From the NCBI GenBank assembly GCA_021613535.1, contig CP075496.1:13640001-13704000 (forward strand): a stretch of DNA of 64,000 nucleotides, read 5' to 3'. The notes beneath the pieces were generated by a model. That model saw only the letters and a list, made by a program, of their open reading frames with translations. It ran no database searches and was not told the DNA's origin. Positions 20,869 through 61,715 of this stretch are shown piece after piece (position 1 is the stretch's first letter; each line of letters opens with the position of its first letter). The DNA comes from Adineta vaga. Taxonomy: Eukaryota; Animalia; Rotifera. Position numbers and translations under genes: made by a program.

Positions 20869-22386
20869 ATGGTTCGCATTGCAGTTTTGGGTTGTGGAAC
20901 TATGGGTTTGAAAATTGCAGGTTTATATCTTCGATTTGATTGTTTATTATTGATCGATTTTTCTTTGTTTCATAGGCAATTTCGCCTATTATGGTCATAT
21001 TGTAAAGATTTTCGATAGTGATTTAAGACAATTGGATAGTGCATGTGAGCGTATTCATCATGATGAAGATCAATTATATCGTGATGGACTTATTGAAATG
21101 CCGAAATTTTTAGTGAGTTTTTTATCTACAAAATCTTCAAATTTCTTTCTTTTTCCATCAGGGTCAAATCTTATGTTTAAATCGTCTTGAAGATGCTGTT
21201 AAAGATGTGGAATTTATTTTCGAATGTATTGTTGAAAATCTAGAACTAAAACAATCATTAATTGAAAGTAGGAATTTTCATGCAAAGAAAATTAGGTTAA
21301 ACAAGAACAGCCTCTTTTTACTTACCTATAGAATGACATACTTTTCAGGTCAGTTTTAACCGATATAATTTTCTTCATTATTCGAGAGAAACGAAAAAAA
21401 GACGATGAATACTTTTATCATAAGGAGTCGACTTTCTACTAGAAAAAAAAAGAATAATTTTAAACTGTCGTCATCAAGAACTCCATTTTCAAAATAAAGA
21501 ACGAAAAAATTAGGTCAAAAAAAATAAATTGTTCTACTTTTCTATTTTTAAGAAGCTGCTCAATCCGCTCCAGCAGATGCTATCATATGCTCAAATACAA
21601 TGCGATTAGATTTAGACAAAATATCGGAAAATCTTCTTCATAAAGAAGTAAATTGATCTTTAGTATTTCTAATTATCCATTAGAAGAAAAATTGTTCAAT
21701 TTAGAATTTTCTTGGAGCACGATTTTTGTATCCCGTATATTATGTATCGGAAGTTGAACTCAATCCAAGTATTTCAACAAGTACACAAACAATCAGTGCT
21801 TGTATGGAAATTCTATTCGTAATTTTCATTGATTAAACTTTCATTTTTTTTAGTAAGAAAATTACTTGAACAGATGGATAAAGTTTTGTACTTTCGTTCA
21901 ACAATGGATCCATTGATTCTCGATGAAGAACAACGTGAAACAAGACGAAAAGGTATTTTTTTTATGGACAAAGAATTTTCAATTGATAATGAATATTTCA
22001 TTTAGCTCGTATTGAACAATTGAAAAAAAGTAGTGGAATTATGGTTGTTCGTGGTCGAACATTACCTGAATTATCATCATCATCACATCGAACTGGTGGT
22101 CATGGTGGAACTCGTAGTGATTTAAGTAAATAATTCAAAACAATATTTTTTCGTTGTTTACAATTAATTTCTTTTAGTTGATAGTGCAACTAATGGAAAT
22201 AATAATTCTTTGGCTAATGAAAATGTTGATTGTTCAATTTGTATGGATCGTCCACGAAATTCTGTTATACGTTCATGTAATCATTTTGTTACATGTTATG
22301 AATGTGCACGTCTTCTATATAATCGAAAAGATCCATGTCCAGTTTGTCGAAAACGTATTGATGATGTTATTCGTGTATATACATGA
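20869..22386 (+). CDS. 3-hydroxyacyl-CoA dehydrogenase-like NAD-binding domain fused to a C-terminal C3HC4 RING finger
   Basis: Eight exons splice in frame. MVRIAVLGCGTMG (GxGxxG), FIFECIVENLELKQ, AIICSNT, FLGARFLYPVYY..EVE; ends CSICMDRPRNSVIRSCNHFVTCYECARLL....CPVCRKRIDDVIRVYT*. Not shown by the ORF track because exons are short. Confidence 0.88.
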
Positions 22387-22789
22387 AAAATTTTCTTATT
22401 TTAATATTGTACGTCGTGTGTCAGATGTATTGTGATATAGAACCACTTTTTTTTTGAATATTTTATAAATATAAATATTATTATATCGATGTATTATGCT
22501 TTGAATCTATTTTAGAGATTATACAAAGAGTTTTATTCTTTTTTTCTGTCTTTTCATAATGATCGAATTAAAACAATCATCATATTGGTAAGTCTTTTTC
22601 AGACATGATGAAGAGTATAGAAACATAAAAATACTGTCGAAAAGATAATAGATATAAAAATGTTCGAGAATTGATGGCAAAAATCTGACCTATTTCTATA
22701 TTAAAACTAGAGCATGTTTGCGTATGTTAGTCTTATCTATGCATTTGGTCTTTCAACCCCCTTTAAAGAAAGTAAATAGACTCGACTAG

Positions 22790-22797
22790 TATATAAA
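22790..22797 (+). promoter_or_regulatory. Possible TATA box upstream of the CDP-transferase fusion gene
   Basis: TATATAAA ~65 nt before ATG 22859; weak evidence in AT-rich DNA. Confidence 0.25.
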
Positions 22798-22858
22798 GAT
22801 CTTCTCATTTGAAATATTTTCATACTAATACCCATACCTTAAAATAAAATACTGAGAA

Positions 22859-24703
22859 ATGACAAATCAAACTCTTAATATACATTTTCGTATGTATTTA
22901 TAAACGTTGTTTTTCTTCCTATAAATATTTTTTTAATTTATATTATTTCCTCTAGGTTTTCAAGGATTATTATCGATAGTTCAATGGTTTCTCAATCTTT
23001 TGATAACAATCAATCAGATTATGACATCATTTATGTTTCATCTGGTGATTTGGTACGATTTATATGTATATACACCATTACAAATGTACCTTTCACCACA
23101 TATGGCTCACATTCCACGTGTTATTCAAATTGGAAATAAAACTATTACTGTATTCAATGCTAATATTGTCACTTATTCACGAACACTTCTTATTATTCCA
23201 ATTGCATGGTGTTTAAAGTAAGTTTTAATCTTAAATTTTCTTGAAAATGTTCATAAATATTCATTTGTATTTAGATTCAATCATCCAATCTCTGCTTGTT
23301 TATTAGTATTATTTCATGATTTTCTTGATCATATTGATGGAATTGTTGCTAAAGTTCATAAACGTATCTATGGTGATAATATTGATGATCCATTATTAGG
23401 CGGTTTTATGGATGCATTTTGCGATAAAATTGTTAATGTTTTCTGTCTTTGGACAATTATACAAGAAACACATTTCGAACAAACATCAACTTTATTTACA
23501 ATGTTATTTGTACTTCTTTGTTATACAATCATTGCACTTGAAACAGCAATTGGTATTGTACGAGTACAAGATTATTTTCATGCTGCTCTTCTTGGAAATA
23601 AGTATAATATTAATTCAACATCTGCTGTTATGGAAGGAAAATTAAAAGAAAAACTTGAATCAATTGGATTAGCATTTTTATGTTTATCAACTGATTATCT
23701 TTCACCATTTGAACATTGGTGTAAGTAAACGAATTCATTTGTTTTATTTATTCTATTCAATTAATCTTATTTAATGATTTATTTTTAGCTGGAATATCTG
23801 GTGTCCTTTGTTTTGCATTAACAATTCGATTAGCATATATTTCTTTAATGAAGAAATTACAAGCACGACAAATAAATGATGAAAAAAAGAAAAGTGTTAC
23901 TATTAATGAACAAATCTGTGAAATTGAAATACCTGTTCAAAAATCAATTGCAGTTATGAATTCATTGAATTTAACAAATGTTACAAAAACACGTCAACGA
24001 GCAATGACAGTCAATTCATCACGAGAAGAAGTATGTGTTCTTTTGAAATGATTTTATATGAATTTTTTCTATCTTTTTTCTTTAATTATAGAATGAAAAA
24101 ATGAAACGTATAAGTTTTTCATCATCTAATGATTCTGAAGATGAAACAAATGAACGTCAAAGTTCAAACTCATCATCATCATCTGAAATTCATAATGAAT
24201 CTTCACCTGTCTATCAACGTAGTGCATCATTACCATCTATTTGGATTGATGGTCGTGCTGATAAAGTTTACACTGTTGGTTGTTTTGATTTATTTCATGA
24301 AGGTCATCGTCTTCTTCTTCAACGTATGAGACAATATGGTCGTCAAGTTATTGTTGGTGTACATGATAGTCGTAGTATTCATAAATTAAAGAAACGTGTA
24401 CCTGTTGATGGAACTGAAACACGTATGTTGAATGTTAAACGATATGCAGATGAAGTTTATTGTGTTGCTGGTACAGATCCATCAAATTTTGTTAAATGTA
24501 TTGTACATTTACGTGAAAATGAAACAGCTGTTTATATACGCGGTGATGATATGGCCGACTTTCCATGTCGTGATATTGTCGAAGAATTAATGCCAGTTAA
24601 ATTTCTACCGTATACAAGTGGTGTTTCGAGTACACAATTACGCAAAGAATTATTTTCACATATTCAAGCAGATGATATAGAACATTTAGAAAAAGTAAAT
24701 TGA
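22859..24703 (+). CDS. Bifunctional CDP-alcohol phosphotransferase (N-terminal, membrane) + TagD/glycerol-3-phosphate cytidylyltransferase-like domain (C-terminal)
   Basis: NANIVTYSR; DFLDHIDGIVAK...GGFMDAFCDK (DxxDGxxA(R/K)..GxxxDxxxD); C-terminal VYTVGCFDLFHEGH (HxGH), VIVGVHD, RGDD, LPYTSGVSSTQLR. Five exons join in frame. Confidence 0.88.
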
Positions 24704-25288
24704 ATCAATTGAGTTATTTTTCTCAATGAATCTCAATTTGAAAAAAAACCTTGTTTCTATTATTTGTATGTATATATATATATCGTTGTATATTGTGTTT
24801 CGATTTGATTTTAATAATAAATATTAGCAATTTATTAATTTCATTCGTTGTTCTTGCCAGAGATAATTGGTAAGAGAACTGCTTTGTTGAAATAATTGAT
24901 AAGAATAGAACAGTCTGTTCACTTTTGATTGATTCAATCATTTCTTTTCTTCGCTTCGAGTAAGCATGCATGTTACTAAATTCGCACATACTTTACAGAA
25001 AAATAACTAACCTATAGTAAATGTCTATGATTATTTTAGATGATTCGCTTTTCGAATTAAAAATTACGTAAGTACAAAAATATTACATTAGAATTAATAA
25101 TTTTCTCTGATACAACAGTGATAACCTTCAGTAGATCATTTTTCTTTCGTTCGTTTGATAGCAAACTGAAGAAGAAAAACATCTATTTGATTCGTGTGAG
25201 TAATATATTTTTTTCTTTCTTTCTGCATAATATTTGTTAAACAAGTCGTGTTTTATAAAAACATCGTTTCTTTAGCATATCTTCCAAA

Positions 25289-27492
25289 ATGCCCGGTATA
25301 CGTTTATTTGGTCGTCGATTTAATTTTGCATCTGATGATTTAACTATTCCATGTATAATTGATATTATACTTCGTCTTCCATTATTAGCGACATTTATTA
25401 TCTTTCGTTTGAAAGATGAATCACCTGATTCAAAATGTCCATCATCATTTTATATGGGATATTTTTATCCACTTTTAAGTGTTTATGCTGCGATTATGAT
25501 TCTTGCATTGATTATGCTTTTTACAAGTTTACGAGGAACACCGGTGAAAAATACTCGACCACGTCGTCATATGCCACTAATGATTTATATTCGTTTACTT
25601 CTTGTTTTAATTGATATCAGTATAAATATATTGGGTTTAATTATAATTGTACAAGTTTTTCAAGTTTGTGCATTAATTTTACGTGCAACAATTGTTACAT
25701 CGATTGCATTAAGTTGGACAGTTGCTGCTGCATTATTTATTATCTTAGCATTCTTTTTCGATTTAAGTGGAGTTGTTAGTCCTGAGAAGAAATGGGAAAT
25801 GAGAATAAAATTAATTTTCTGTTGTGGACGAGGCTATGGTAAGTGATGATTTAATGAAAATGCTCTTTTTTTTAGTTATGAAAAACTTCTTTTTCTTTCT
25901 CGAATAGGAGGACAATCATCAGATATAAAAAATATTGTTAAAACATTAAGATATTTAATTGATGATGAAAGATTTGATCTTGTGCCCAGTGATGTTGCAG
26001 CTGGTCTTATACTTTTACAACAAGAAGATGTTCTTGAAGAACGATCAATTGATATTGTAGAATCAGTACCATTAGACTTACTCAAAGAAGGACTTTATTA
26101 TAATTCCTATGCACAATCTGCTTTTGGATGGTAAATATATTTGTTTTGAATGTTGATTAGTTGTCTTTTTTCTTTCGAAGGTTTTCTTTAGCATATCAAT
26201 ATCGATTAACATTTCTTCCACGAATTCTTTTTGCTATGCGATTTAAGTAAGTAATAAAACGATTTCAGACATGAATTCATTATGAATTCATTTAGAACAA
26301 TCGGTTTTTGTTGTGCATGTTGTTTACCATGTTGTCAAAATCAAGCTAGTCTCAACGATCCATGTGGAAGTCAATATAGTACATTAACATATCTTTTACG
26401 GAAACAAAAACCTGTTATTTTATATGCAAATTTTCTCGGTGCACTTCATCGAGGTAGAAGAATATTTTTTTCTCAGAAAAAATAATCTTTTGAAATTTAT
26501 TCTGTCATTTTAGCTCCATTTTATATTGCTGCTGATAATGATAAGAGAAAAATTATTGTATCTATTCGTGGAACATTAAGTGCAACAGATATATTAACTG
26601 ATATTAATGCAATAGAAGATACTTTAGACACGGAATTATTTGGAAGTGGACATTGTCATAGTGGTAAATATTATTGTTTTTTGAACTAATTGAATAAAGA
26701 ATAATATTATGAAATGTTTTTTATTATTATTCATCGATAGGTATGCATACTGCAGCTAATTATATTCGTGATGATATTTCAACACGTTTAATTGATATAT
26801 TTCTTCAATATCCTGATTATGAATTAGTCATCTGTGGTTATTCACTTGGTGCTGGAATTGCTGCAATACTTGCTCTTTTATTAAAACCGACTTATCCTCA
26901 TTTAAAATGTTATGGTATTGCTATGCCTGGTTCTGTTTTATCAGAAAATTTAGCTTTAGCTACCCGTCATTTTATCTACGCATATGTTGTAGATGTTGAT
27001 ATGATTGGTCGTGCATCAATACGTTCATTAGAACATTTACGTGATCGTATTATTGATGCTCTCGATAAATGTAATCGAAATAAAATGAGAGTATTAACAA
27101 TGACACTTGTTGAAACATTGAGGAAACGACGACAAGCATTTCATTCGATGAATAGTCGTACACAAACATTGATTGATGATTCGTTATTACCTTCAAATAC
27201 AATAGAAACGACAAATACTGAAGCAACTGTTACACAAATTGTTCTTACTCGTCGTTCTGGTGAACGGCAACATTTAGTTATGCCAGGTACAATTATTCAT
27301 CTATATTCAACACATCGTGTGGGATTATTTTCACGAAAAATATCATATCGTGCTTGTATGAGCGCATATAATCATTTTTCTCAGCTGATTGTTCACCCAA
27401 GAATGTGGTTGGATCATTTTCCTGCATCATATAATACGGCATTAACAGATGCTATCAACAATTATGATCAAAATTTACAAGATATTAGCTAG
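25289..27492 (+). CDS. DAGL: Diacylglycerol lipase (DAGL alpha/beta family, lipase class 3)
   Basis: MPGIRLFGRRFNFASDD N-terminus, four TM helices, DLVPSDVAAGLILL, IVSIRGTLS..DILTD, CHSGM, GYSLGAG nucleophile elbow, DMIGR, WLDHFP. Confidence 0.9.
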
Positions 27493-60538: not shown

Positions 60539-61161
60539 TTAGAATTTTGGAACATCAATCTTCGAAACCATTAATGCTGCTAGAGCAATCATAATAAGTG
60601 GTGAAACGTAGGAAAATATTGCTAAAAATGCAACTGTTAAACCAGCAGCTGGAATTGGAAGACCAATGAAATGTCCTTCAGTTGGATTAACATTGAATCG
60701 AGCTAAACGCCAAGCACCGGCTAGACTAAAAACAACAAATAAATGTGTTTTAATAAAAAAAAAGAAACAATTCAGACTTACGGAAAACTAAAAAATGCGA
60801 TTATCATAAAAAATGACCATTGTGAAATTGAATAAGCTAGTATAGTTGGTGCAACACCGAACGAAACAACATCTGCTAATGAATCTAATTGTGCACCAAT
60901 TTTTGTTGTCAAACCAAGCATTCGTGCAACACGTCCATCGAAGAAGTCACATGCAGCCGCAATAAAAATAAATAAAGCTGAAAATCGATGAAGACCATTC
61001 ATAGCCATGATTAGAGAAAAAAGGCCACAAGCTAAATTTCCTAATGTTAATGCATTAGGCGCAGAAAGACGAAGTTTTCGTCCATATTCATCAATTAATT
61101 TTACATAAACATTATCCGATGATGGCGATGTTTTGATTTCAATTTCATCTGTATTCGACAT
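60539..61161 (-). CDS. pssA: CDP-diacylglycerol-serine O-phosphatidyltransferase (PssA, type II, bacterial-like)
   Basis: PNALTLGNLACG, DFFDGRVARML...IGAQLDSLADVVSFGVAP, AGAWRLARFN, FIGLPIPAAG, LMVS...PK; one 56-nt GT-AG intron (60726-60781). Confidence 0.9.
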
Positions 61162-61715
61162 TGTTATTGATTTGATCAATCTGAATTTACATAAAATGTT
61201 ACAGTTGACTAGTCGCAAGATTAATGACTCATGGAAATCGATTAGTGATTTTGTTAAGATTCGAAAATCAGGTAATGAAATTTTTCATATATCTGTTTGA
61301 AAAAAAAACGATATATGAAAAATAAGAATATTCAAATTTCTTATTTCTTCTTATAGATATAGAGAGATCCGATCAATAAAATGATTGGCTTACATATACA
61401 TATAATATTAGAAAATTTTTATTTTTAAATTTATTAATTCGAAAAAATATTTTTTTATTTTAGAAAATCGTTATAAAACAGAAATGGATTCAAAATTTCA
61501 TTATCAATTTAGCGACATCTTTTGAACCAATAGTGAGCTATAGCAAATATTTTTCTTCTTCTTCTTCATATATTATTACTACTGCTACCCCACCCTCACC
61601 CTACTTTCTTTTTAACGCATCTGCATCGATGGTACGATCATGGAAGTAGAAAGAAAGCTCGTTACTATGTTAATATCACGTTTTCTTTCTAAACTTTTAA
61701 TGGTTATGAAAAAAA

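What the first reader, a model, noticed from the sequence alone, without database searches (positions are those of the whole stretch)
22859..24703. One-gene activate-and-transfer pathway: CDP-alcohol phosphotransferase fused to a TagD-like cytidylyltransferase
Seen: membrane domain with a complete signature D-HI-DG-IV-AK-x15-G-GFM-D-AFC-D (long spacer), a Ser-rich linker, then a single HxGH domain (FDLFHEGH, RGDD, YTSGVSST). Established: HxGH cytidylyltransferases make CDP-glycerol/-choline/-ethanolamine and CDP-alcohol transferases consume such donors. Animal PCYT1/PCYT2 and CEPT1/PIS/CRLS1 are separate proteins. The functional precedent IPCT/DIPPS makes stress solutes (di-myo-inositol phosphate) in thermophiles but uses a different cytidylyltransferase fold and the opposite domain order. 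Inference: this enzyme makes an unusual phosphodiester, either a lipid head group (ceramide- or DAG-linked polyol phosphate, ethanolamine phosphate or aminoethylphosphonate) or a polyol-phosphodiester osmolyte. That would matter in bdelloids, which survive desiccation without trehalose accumulation.
Basis: partly seen in the sequence, partly recalled or inferred. Interest (0 to 1): 0.8.

Follow-up and report, generated by a model that had tools for sequence, protein, structure and literature searches.

The report
Fused head-group activating and transferring enzyme
This is a real, expressed rotifer gene that joins a membrane CDP-alcohol phosphotransferase to a cytidylyltransferase in one protein; it belongs to an old, unstudied family found in many invertebrates and some protists, so it is not a bdelloid speciality, and what it makes is still unknown.

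Summary
Five exons (22859-24703, + strand) encode a 530-residue protein. RNA contigs from three studies show all four GT..AG splices, including the 61-nt intron that joins the membrane domain in frame to the HxGH domain. A DNA-like run keeps the introns. The database protein P0214 (A. vaga hypothetical protein) equals the exons piece by piece.

Both Pfam domains pass their cut-offs. All four catalytic Asp of the membrane motif and the HxGH motif are invariant or nearly so in 35 orthologues. Between the two A. vaga ohnologues both domains are under purifying selection (dN/dS 0.13-0.30) and the linker is neutral (about 1).

The gene is not bdelloid-specific or foreign. Orthologues occur in monogononts, molluscs, Lingula, a nemertean, amphioxus and the sponge Sycon, and degenerate versions in two protists. 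The desiccation framing is therefore unsupported.

The cytidylyltransferase belongs to an uncharacterised clade that is repeatedly fused to CDP-alcohol or LicD transferases. That supports an "activate then transfer" mechanism.

The substrate is unresolved. My leading guess is a phosphoethanolamine or aminoethylphosphonate head group transferred to a lipid. A. vaga has PEP mutase and phosphonopyruvate decarboxylase, but cnidarians have PEP mutase without this fusion. I found no paper on the family.

The parts
22859..22889 (+). Exon 1. Start codon at 22859, residues 1-10 plus the first base of codon 11. An in-frame TGA lies at 22853-22855 upstream.
   Evidence: Joint 22889|22956 in RNA contig X3 record 16.
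22890..22955 (+). Intron 1, 66 nt, GT..AG.
   Evidence: table 5 (X3).
22956..23217 (+). Exon 2. Contains an extra N-terminal hydrophobic helix (residues about 13-43), the conserved WYD-Y-Y-PLQ...IPR segment, a beta-hairpin, and the start of the CDP-OH domain (F77, A79, N80 and R86 invariant).
23218..23274 (+). Intron 2, 57 nt, GT..AG. It splits the CDP-OH domain.
   Evidence: X1, X3.
23275..23720 (+). Exon 3. Core of the CDP-alcohol phosphotransferase domain (TM2-TM5), with the conserved RVQDYF and MEGKLKEKLES segments.
23318..23425 (+). Catalytic motif: D113, D116-x2-D119-G120-x2-A-K124, a 15-residue spacer holding the D135-D136-P137 triplet (D135 invariant; D136 and P137 conserved in at least 90% of sequences), G140-x3-D144-x3-D148.
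   Evidence: for coordinates. D113, D116, D119, D135 and D148 invariant; G120, G140 and D144 conserved in at least 90% of 35 sequences.
23721..23788 (+). Intron 3, 68 nt, GT..AG.
   Evidence: X1, X3, X6.
23789..24030 (+). Exon 4. Last transmembrane helix (residues about 247-270) and the first half of the disordered linker.
24031..24091 (+). Intron 4, 61 nt, GT..AG. Removing it joins the membrane domain to the cytidylyltransferase domain in frame (...SSREE|NEKMKR...).
   Evidence: joint 24030|24092 in X1, X3 and X6, with 237-242 letters on the shorter side. It is absent from the DNA-like run X11.
24092..24703 (+). Exon 5. Ser-rich linker (residues 328 to about 377), the CTP_transf_like domain (about 383-514), a short C-terminal helix and the TGA stop.
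24296..24307 (+). HxGH motif (H396-E-G398-H399). H396, G398 and H399 are invariant; the second position varies.
24611..24643 (+). YTSGVSSTQLR, the clade's version of the RTEGISTT motif. Tyr replaces the Arg, and R511 is invariant.
24704..24838 (+). 3' UTR up to the poly(A) addition site.
   Evidence: table 7: X6 contig ends at 24838 followed by 20 A.

Best explanation
The gene encodes a bifunctional membrane enzyme.

Inferred mechanism:
- The C-terminal HxGH domain, in the cytosol, condenses CTP with a small phosphorylated (or phosphonylated) alcohol to give a CDP- (or CMP-) activated head group plus pyrophosphate.
- The N-terminal six-helix CDP-alcohol phosphotransferase domain has its Asp-rich metal site at the cytosolic membrane face. 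It then transfers the phospho-head group to a hydroxyl acceptor and releases CMP.
- A roughly 90-residue disordered tether keeps the two active sites close, so the activated intermediate is made where it is used.

Shown here: one spliced in-frame transcript; both domains present with intact catalytic residues; purifying selection on both domains; an old, vertically inherited family.

Inferred: use of CTP, the sidedness, the hand-over between the domains, and the substrates.

My ranking for the head group and acceptor:
- Phosphoethanolamine or its phosphonate analogue 2-aminoethylphosphonate onto a lipid alcohol (ceramide or diradylglycerol): about 0.35.
- A glycerol- or polyol-phosphate donor: about 0.2.
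- A soluble phosphodiester product: about 0.15.
- Something else: the remainder.
For: - Transcript and frame: one search gives four GT..AG joints in RNA contigs of three studies and a poly(A) tail. One search shows that every exon peptide maps onto P0214.
- Domains: (Pfam 30.7 and 54.8 bits).
- Fold. The membrane part is closest to PgsA 7drj (Z 15.8), PIP synthase 5d92 (Z 14.8) and IPCT-DIPPS 4mnd (Z 12.6). The C-terminal part is closest to TagD 1coz (TM 0.82), Fom1 CyTase 5x3d and TarD 2b7l (Z 13.3 each).
- Conservation: (catalytic Asp and HxGH invariant in 35 sequences from at least 6 phyla).
- Selection. dN/dS is 0.13-0.30 for the membrane parts, 0.135 for the cytidylyltransferase domain and 1.0-1.1 for the linker.
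- Ohnologue. The copy on C1 keeps the same order and an in-frame junction.
- Rosetta-stone support: of 40 multi-domain relatives of this cytidylyltransferase domain scanned are CDP-OH + CT, 3 are CT + CDP-OH, 11 are fused to LicD, and 1 is CT + PS decarboxylase with a CDP-OH gene next door. A stand-alone relative lies between LicD and glycosyltransferase genes.
- Sidedness: by homology with the six-helix enzymes, both termini and the active site face the cytoplasm (established knowledge of those structures).
- Ethanolamine/AEP idea: the family profile hits human ECT best among solved proteins (3.9e-18). HxGH cytidylyltransferases that activate phosphonates exist (Fom1, PhpF; PMC6697681). A. 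vaga has PEP mutase (341.5 bits against 319.55) and phosphonopyruvate decarboxylase (exon scores sum to about 353 bits against 312.5). AEP-pathway transcripts were seen in A. ricciae (PMC3499245).
Against: - No activity was measured and no substrate is known for any member of this cytidylyltransferase clade.
- The clade replaces the Arg of the RTEGISTT motif by Tyr.
- No curated equivalog model comes near its cut-off (TagD 42.9 against 165.4; RfaE domain II 48.3 against 181.5).
- The membrane domain has a 15-residue spacer where the canonical motif has about 8. It matches no solved CDP-alcohol enzyme by sequence profile at E up to 1.
- The protist homologues Thecamonas and Nutomonas keep the cytidylyltransferase domain but have lost the catalytic Asp of the membrane domain. 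So the membrane part can serve as a mere anchor, and the activated product can be used by other enzymes.
- Against the AEP idea: PEP mutase is present in cnidarians, locusts, a barnacle and Capsaspora, and none of these appeared among the 112 hits of the fusion family. None of the 40 multi-domain relatives scanned was fused to PEP mutase.
Confidence: 0.7

Rival explanations
1. It is a soluble phosphodiester synthase, as IPCT/DIPPS is. The cytidylyltransferase domain makes a CDP-polyol (for example CDP-glycerol). The membrane domain couples it to a soluble phosphorylated alcohol, giving a compatible-solute-like phosphodiester after dephosphorylation.
For: The closest solved folds of the membrane domain are enzymes with soluble phosphorylated acceptors: PgsA, PIP synthase and DIPPS (Z 15.8-12.6). 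CHPT1, whose acceptor is a lipid, scores only 8.8. The best NCBIfam hits are archaetidylinositol-phosphate synthase and IPCT/DIPPS. Invariant basic residues K149 and R194 sit near the site.
Against: All those scores are far below family cut-offs (31 against 180 bits; 20.9 against 580). The low Z for CHPT1 may only reflect its ten-helix size. I know of no such solute in molluscs, amphioxus or rotifers. The hosts live in very different osmotic settings, including land snails and freshwater rotifers.
Confidence: 0.15
2. Only the cytidylyltransferase is catalytic. The membrane domain is an anchor or regulator that places it on a membrane, and the CDP-product is consumed by the ordinary separate transferases (CEPT1/EPT1-like).
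For: The Thecamonas and Nutomonas homologues keep a well conserved cytidylyltransferase domain but have a degenerate Asp motif. A. vaga has many separate CDP-OH genes. SPX + CT fusions show that this clade is often joined to purely regulatory domains.
Against: In animals D113, D116, D119 and D148 are invariant, and G120, G140 and D144 are conserved in at least 90% of sequences from sponge to amphioxus. The membrane core has dN/dS 0.13-0.30 between ohnologues. The stand-alone membrane homologue of Chromosphaera keeps the full motif.
Confidence: 0.12
3. There are two separate genes (or an operon resolved by trans-splicing): a CDP-alcohol transferase ending at the in-frame stop 24049-24051, and a cytidylyltransferase starting at ATG 24101.
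For: The unspliced reading has a stop 19 nt into intron 4 and an ATG 10 nt into exon 5.
Against: RNA contigs of three studies span the 24030|24092 joint with more than 230 letters on each side, and none retains the intron. The same in-frame junction exists in the ohnologue and in the fused proteins of at least 6 phyla, including a Sycon transcriptome model. Contigs cannot exclude a minor shorter isoform.
Confidence: 0.03
4. It is a bdelloid-specific or horizontally acquired adaptation to desiccation.
For: Bdelloids carry many foreign genes, and the closest solved folds of the membrane domain are prokaryotic.
Against: The nearest relatives are all animal proteins. The tree follows animal groups: bdelloids, monogononts, molluscs, amphioxus and the sponge are each together. 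The gene has four spliceosomal introns. It is present in non-anhydrobiotic marine animals. I retrieved no expression data on drying.
Confidence: 0.03

Closest known systems
IPCT/DIPPS of hyperthermophiles (Archaeoglobus fulgidus, PDB 4mnd)
   Same: One polypeptide carries a cytidylyltransferase and a six-helix CDP-alcohol phosphotransferase that uses the first domain's product. The membrane fold is similar (Z 12.6, 190 residues aligned).
   Different: The cytidylyltransferase there is an N-terminal NTP_transferase (GlmU-like) fold. Here it is a C-terminal HxGH Rossmann-like fold. NF041135 scores 20.9 bits against a cut-off of 580. The hosts here are eukaryotes. The substrates here are unknown.
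TagD/TarD glycerol-3-phosphate cytidylyltransferase (PDB 1coz, 2b7l)
   Same: This is the best structural match of the C-terminal domain (TM 0.82; Z 13.3). It shares HxGH, the K-x-K pair and the GDD segment.
   Different: Sequence identity is 24-29%. TIGR01518 scores 42.9 bits against 165.4. The RTEGISTT Arg is replaced by Tyr. TagD is a stand-alone bacterial enzyme.
Human ethanolamine-phosphate cytidylyltransferase PCYT2 (PDB 3elb, 4xsv)
   Same: It is the best sequence match among solved proteins (3e-13 with the single sequence, 3.9e-18 with the family profile). It acts in animal lipid head-group activation.
   Different: PCYT2 is a soluble tandem of two cytidylyltransferase domains. A. vaga has its own separate PCYT2-like and PCYT1-like loci. 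One amphioxus member of this family is auto-named PCYT2, which is a misnomer.
Fom1 CyTase domain (PDB 5x3d) and PhpF, phosphonate-activating HxGH cytidylyltransferases
   Same: Same fold (Z 13.3, rmsd 2.5 over 116 residues, 26% identity). They show that this fold can activate phosphonates (PMC6697681).
   Different: The family profile gives only 1.3e-6. Fom1 is fused to PEP mutase, not to a transferase. No PEP-mutase fusion was seen among the relatives scanned.
PgsA and PIP synthase (PDB 7drj, 5d92, 6h5a)
   Same: These are the closest solved folds of the membrane domain (Z 15.8, 14.8 and 13.0). They share the Asp-rich motif on TM2-TM3.
   Different: They use CDP-diacylglycerol as donor and have no cytidylyltransferase domain. 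There is no sequence-profile match at E up to 1. The spacer in the motif here is 15 residues.
Drosophila CPES and CEPT1/CHPT1 (animal CDP-alcohol phosphotransferases that use soluble CDP-donors)
   Same: The same superfamily and the same type of reaction as inferred here: a soluble CDP-head group transferred to a lipid alcohol.
   Different: CHPT1 matches only at Z 8.8. I could not compare CPES, because no reference sequence was available through the tools. Neither is fused to a cytidylyltransferase (own knowledge).

Membership tests
CDP-alcohol phosphotransferase (Pfam PF01066) | Profile match above the gathering score | tested here: met
   P0214 scores 30.7 bits and P0222 31.0 bits against a cut-off of 22. 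Exon 3 alone scores 17 bits.
CDP-alcohol phosphotransferase (Pfam PF01066) | Motif D-x2-D-G-x2-A-R...G-x3-D-x3-D on TM2-TM3 | tested here: met
   All four Asp and both Gly are present, and each is invariant or conserved in at least 90% of sequences. Two variations: Lys replaces Arg in rotifers and molluscs (Arg in amphioxus and Sycon), and the spacer is 15 residues rather than about 8.
CDP-alcohol phosphotransferase (Pfam PF01066) | Six-helix membrane fold of the solved members | tested here: met
   The AF2 model has pLDDT 83-96 over the core. Z is 15.8 to PgsA, 14.8 to PIP synthase and 12.6 to DIPPS.
CDP-alcohol phosphotransferase (Pfam PF01066) | Transfer of a substituted phosphate from a CDP-donor to an alcohol | not testable with these tools
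   This needs an enzyme assay.
HxGH nucleotidyltransferase, cytidylyltransferase branch (Pfam PF01467) | Profile match above the gathering score, and the HxGH motif | tested here: met
   54.8-57.3 bits against a cut-off of 21. H396, G398 and H399 are invariant.
HxGH nucleotidyltransferase, cytidylyltransferase branch (Pfam PF01467) | RTEGISTT-type C-terminal motif | tested here: inconclusive
   The T-x-G-x-S-S/T core is kept (S506 and T508 invariant), but the Arg is replaced by the invariant Y501. An invariant R511 follows. The whole clade shares this change.
HxGH nucleotidyltransferase, cytidylyltransferase branch (Pfam PF01467) | Use of CTP rather than ATP | not testable with these tools
   CTP use is inferred from the nearest characterised relatives (ECT, TagD) and from fusion partners that use CDP-donors. 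HldC, an adenylyltransferase, is also a neighbour.
TagD glycerol-3-phosphate cytidylyltransferase (TIGR01518 equivalog) | Score above the equivalog cut-off | tested here: not met
   42.9 bits against 165.4. The closest stand-alone relatives also fail.
IPCT/DIPPS (NF041135 equivalog) | Score above the cut-off; N-terminal NTP_transferase-fold cytidylyltransferase | tested here: not met
   19.4-20.9 bits against 580, covering the membrane part only. The cytidylyltransferase domain here has the HxGH fold and is C-terminal.

The most novel reading that the evidence does not exclude
This family is the missing animal enzyme of phosphonolipid or ceramide-phosphoethanolamine-type synthesis. One polypeptide would make CMP-aminoethylphosphonate (or CDP-ethanolamine) and hand it to ceramide or diradylglycerol at the cytosolic face. 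That would give the CAEP/CPE-type lipids that dominate mollusc membranes, and it would predict such lipids in rotifers, brachiopods, nemerteans, amphioxus and calcareous sponges.
Probability: 0.15. Interest if true: 0.8.

Novelty: new variant of a known kind. Interest (0 to 1): 0.6.

Why it matters
Animals were thought to keep head-group activation (PCYT1/2) and head-group transfer (CEPT1, EPT1, CPES) on separate proteins. Here a conserved family in at least six animal phyla, with relatives in two protist lineages, fuses the two steps. It uses a cytidylyltransferase clade for which no substrate is known.

The genes are in public databases only as "uncharacterized" or, wrongly, as PCYT2. I found no paper on them.

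Carriers include oysters, mussels, snails that host schistosomes, and amphioxus. Assigning the product would therefore fill a gap in invertebrate lipid or metabolite biochemistry. It may also identify the gene for an orphan activity such as ceramide aminoethylphosphonate synthesis. The enzyme is absent from vertebrates among the hits seen here.

Tried and rejected
- Two genes or an operon: rejected, because spliced RNA contigs span the junction.
- Horizontal transfer or a bdelloid speciality: rejected by the hit list and the tree.
- TagD, RfaE domain II or IPCT/DIPPS orthology: rejected, because scores lie far below the equivalog cut-offs.
- Strict co-occurrence with the phosphonate pathway: A. 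vaga has PEP mutase and phosphonopyruvate decarboxylase. The AEP transaminase was ambiguous. PEP mutase is also in cnidarians, locusts, a barnacle, another sponge and Capsaspora, which did not show the fusion. The PEP mutase list was cut at 120 of 5169 hits, so I could not tell whether amphioxus, Lingula, Tubulanus and Sycon have it. The test is inconclusive.
- Gene context of prokaryotic or metagenomic relatives confirmed links to LicD and CDP-OH genes but named no substrate.
- The ESM Atlas look-up of the membrane part only returned generic bacterial CDP-OH clusters.
- Ten paper searches found nothing on this architecture, on a CAEP synthase gene, or on expression of this gene during drying.
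- Simple hydropathy and positive-inside counts did not settle the topology by themselves.
Searches were made exon by exon by reference. The full-length protein was used only as the database entry P0214 that a search returned.
Full report
**What is in the window.** The region is AT-rich eukaryotic DNA (26-31% G+C). The genome (G000) has 100.8 Mb in 6 contigs. Reading the three frames gives a five-exon model on the + strand:
- exon 1, 22859-22889
- exon 2, 22956-23217
- exon 3, 23275-23720
- exon 4, 23789-24030
- exon 5, 24092-24703

All four introns are 57-68 nt and GT..AG.

Every search on the window was made exon by exon by reference. A search later returned the database protein P0214 (530 aa, 'hypothetical protein I4U23_021510 [Adineta vaga]'). 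Each exon peptide maps onto it exactly, with split codons at residues 11, 98 and 247. Work on the whole protein used that entry.

**Is the fusion real?** This was the key risk. Without removal of intron 4 (24031-24091) the membrane protein would stop at 24049-24051, and an ATG at 24101 could start a separate cytidylyltransferase.
- Laying contigs of four public runs on 22100-25400 showed the joints 23217|23275, 23720|23789 and 24030|24092 in RNA-like runs of three different studies. Only X1 and X3 cover the first of these; all three runs (X1, X3, X6) carry the other two.
- The joint 22889|22956 appears in X3.
- X6 record 23 runs from exon 3 through exons 4 and 5 into a poly(A) tail at about 24838.
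- The DNA-like run X11 covers the introns and has none of these joints.
- Between the upstream RING gene (transcript ends near 22441-22518) and exon 1 the RNA runs have no depth. This is therefore a separate transcription unit.
- Contigs cannot exclude a minor shorter isoform.

**Domains and residues.**
- Pfam on P0214 gives CDP-OH_P_transf 30.7 bits (cut-off 22, residues 79-186) and CTP_transf_like 54.8 bits (cut-off 21, residues 387-511).
The Asp motif is complete but has a 15-residue spacer that holds a conserved DDP triplet (D135 invariant; D136 and P137 in at least 90% of sequences).
- In an alignment of 35 full-length orthologues (A1) the following are invariant: D113, D116, D119, A123, D135, G141, D148, K149 and R194 in the membrane half; H396, G398, H399, K427, R477, D480, S506, T508 and R511 in the other half.
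- G120, G140 and D144 are conserved in at least 90% of the sequences.
- The Arg of the classical RTEGISTT motif is replaced by the invariant Tyr 501. This change is shared by the whole clade.

**Second copy and selection.** A second copy lies on G000 contig 1 (P0222, 560 aa). It has the same domain order and the same in-frame junction. It also has one extra intron inside the region matching exon 3 and another after residue 37. Nei-Gojobori estimates between the two copies:

| Region | dN/dS |
|---|---|
| N-region and TM1 | 0.13 |
| CDP-OH core | 0.27 |
| TM6 | 0.30 |
| Cytidylyltransferase domain | 0.135 |
| Two linker pieces | 1.04 and 1.14 |

dS is about 0.5-0.6 throughout. Both domains are kept by selection, and the tether is free to vary.

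**Structure.**
- The AF2 model built on A1 has mean pLDDT 76. The two domains score 80-96, and residues 286-377 are disordered.
- Foldseek is dominated by the C-terminal domain: TagD 1coz (TM 0.82), then the Fom1 cytidylyltransferase domain 5x3d (0.75), HldC, CCT and ECT.
- The Foldseek-independent search places the membrane part next to PgsA 7drj (Z 15.8), PIP synthases 5d92 and 6h5a (14.8, 13.0) and IPCT-DIPPS 4mnd (12.6). CHPT1 scores only 8.8.
- By sequence profile no solved CDP-alcohol enzyme is reached at E up to 1. The cytidylyltransferase half hits human ECT (3.9e-18) and TagD (1.2e-11).
- In the solved six-helix enzymes both termini and the active site face the cytoplasm (established knowledge). 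A C-terminal cytidylyltransferase domain would therefore sit on the same side as the Asp site. The extra N-terminal hydrophobic helix (about 13-43) would put the N-terminus on the other side. My hydropathy and charge count did not settle this independently.

**Who else has it.**
- The exon-5 word search found mostly metagenomic rotifer fragments, but also sea-slug proteins. One of these (P0052) carries the end of the membrane domain.
- The exhaustive representative search found 2001 relatives of the cytidylyltransferase domain, 46 of them at E 1e-30 or better.
- The top full-length relatives have both Pfam domains. They come from Adineta ricciae, Lingula, Tubulanus, Crassostrea and the sponge Sycon.
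- A full-length search added all sampled bdelloid genera, Brachionus, about 35 molluscs (bivalves, gastropods including land and freshwater snails, a chiton) and three Branchiostoma entries. One of those is auto-named PCYT2.
- It also found a Chromosphaera (ichthyosporean) protein that has only the membrane domain.
- No cnidarian, annelid, arthropod, nematode, echinoderm or vertebrate protein was among the 112 hits.
- A quick maximum-likelihood tree groups bdelloids, monogononts, molluscs and amphioxus each together, with the sponge outside. The careful search did not finish. This indicates vertical descent with losses, not horizontal transfer.
- Profile comparison shows the same fusion in Thecamonas and Nutomonas. 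There the Asp motif of the membrane domain is degenerate while the cytidylyltransferase domain is well kept.
- A reversed CT + CDP-OH protein (P0160) and a same-order protein in another eukaryote (P0185) share only the cytidylyltransferase domain with this family. They are independent fusions.

**What the cytidylyltransferase clade tells us.**
- No curated model claims it. TagD scores 42.9 against 165.4 and RfaE domain II 48.3 against 181.5. The closest 140-aa stand-alone relatives fail as well.
- The 40 multi-domain relatives scanned were:

| Architecture | Number |
|---|---|
| CDP-OH + CT | 6 |
| CT + CDP-OH | 3 |
| fused to LicD | 11 |
| SPX + CT (e.g. Cafeteria) | 9 |
| CT + phosphatidylserine decarboxylase, followed by a CDP-OH gene | 1 |
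| HNH + CT | 1 |
| no second Pfam domain | 9 |

- A stand-alone relative sits between LicD and glycosyltransferase genes on a phage-like contig.
- CDP-OH and LicD enzymes both consume CDP-activated alcohols. This repeated pairing is the strongest computational support for 'activate, then transfer'.

**Which substrate?** This remains open.
- In favour of an ethanolamine-type head group, including its phosphonate analogue AEP:
  - ECT is the best solved sequence match.
  - HxGH enzymes that activate phosphonates exist (Fom1, PhpF; PMC6697681).
  - Molluscs, the main carriers, have ceramide aminoethylphosphonate as a major lipid (PMC9174665).
  - A. vaga itself has a bona fide PEP mutase (TIGR02320 341.5 against 319.55 on one exon) and a phosphonopyruvate decarboxylase (four exons summing to about 353 against 312.5 bits).
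  - AEP-pathway transcripts were reported from A. ricciae (PMC3499245).
- Against it:
  - PEP mutase is wider than the fusion (cnidarians, locusts, a barnacle, Corticium, Capsaspora).
  - No PEP-mutase fusion appeared among the relatives scanned.
  - I could not test whether amphioxus, Lingula, Tubulanus and Sycon have PEP mutase.
- The structural neighbours of the membrane domain have soluble phosphorylated acceptors.
- The protist forms with a dead membrane domain show that the cytidylyltransferase product can also be used elsewhere.
- A. vaga keeps separate canonical loci of both families, so this gene is an addition to the ordinary Kennedy enzymes, not a replacement.

**Verdict.**
- It is a genuine one-polypeptide activate-and-transfer enzyme of unknown product.
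- It is analogous to IPCT/DIPPS but has a different cytidylyltransferase fold, the opposite domain order and eukaryotic hosts.
- It is not a bdelloid or desiccation feature.
- I found no publication on the family in ten searches of the held library.
- I class it as a new variant of a known kind, with interest 0.6.

Noticed in passing
window 60778-61218 (- strand): This is an exon of a second CDP-alcohol phosphotransferase. It is of the PssA/CHO1 type (CDP-diacylglycerol-serine O-phosphatidyltransferase). TIGR00473 scores 73.9 bits on this exon alone, and PF01066 scores 70 bits in the genome scan. Animals normally make phosphatidylserine by base exchange, so this gene may deserve its own look (ancient retention or acquired).
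   Followed up: partly
G000:C2:1855283-1855933 (L010 1372-2121, -) and G000:C3:5960270-5961544: A. vaga has a bona fide PEP mutase (TIGR02320 341.5 against 319.55 bits, EDKxxxxxNS motif, N-terminal presequence-like exon) and a phosphonopyruvate decarboxylase. So it can probably make phosphonates. Close PEP mutase homologues (69-76% identity) occur in cnidarians, molluscs, locusts, a barnacle, a sponge and Capsaspora. An earlier paper read the bdelloid transcripts as foreign genes for phosphonate use.
   Followed up: partly
P0090, P0094, P0096, P0100, P0109, P0112, P0113, P0119, P0147 (e.g. Cafeteria roenbergensis): Protists have SPX domain + cytidylyltransferase fusions of the same clade. This suggests phosphate-status control of an unknown CDP-alcohol synthesis.
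   Followed up: no
L019 348-2531: In a MAG with Arf/Ras-type GTPase neighbours, a cytidylyltransferase + phosphatidylserine decarboxylase fusion is followed directly by a 250-aa CDP-alcohol phosphotransferase gene.
   Followed up: no
P0079 (Thecamonas trahens), P0084/P0212 (Nutomonas longa): These are homologues of the whole fusion. The membrane domain has lost the catalytic Asp motif, while the cytidylyltransferase domain stays highly conserved.
   Followed up: partly
window 25067-25276: The downstream gene (ORF from 25289) has alternative 5'-UTR splicing. Joints 25067|25132 plus 25195|25276 occur in one run, and 25067|25276 in another.
   Followed up: no
window 23827-24486: The DNA-like run X11 has one short contig joining 23827 to 24486, with 35 foreign letters between and non-canonical ends. 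It is probably an assembly chimera or a repeat-related artefact, and it is not seen in the RNA runs.
   Followed up: no
P0266 (Branchiostoma lanceolatum): A member of this fusion family is named 'PCYT2' in the public record. It has the CDP-OH + single cytidylyltransferase architecture and is not a PCYT2 orthologue.
   Followed up: partly
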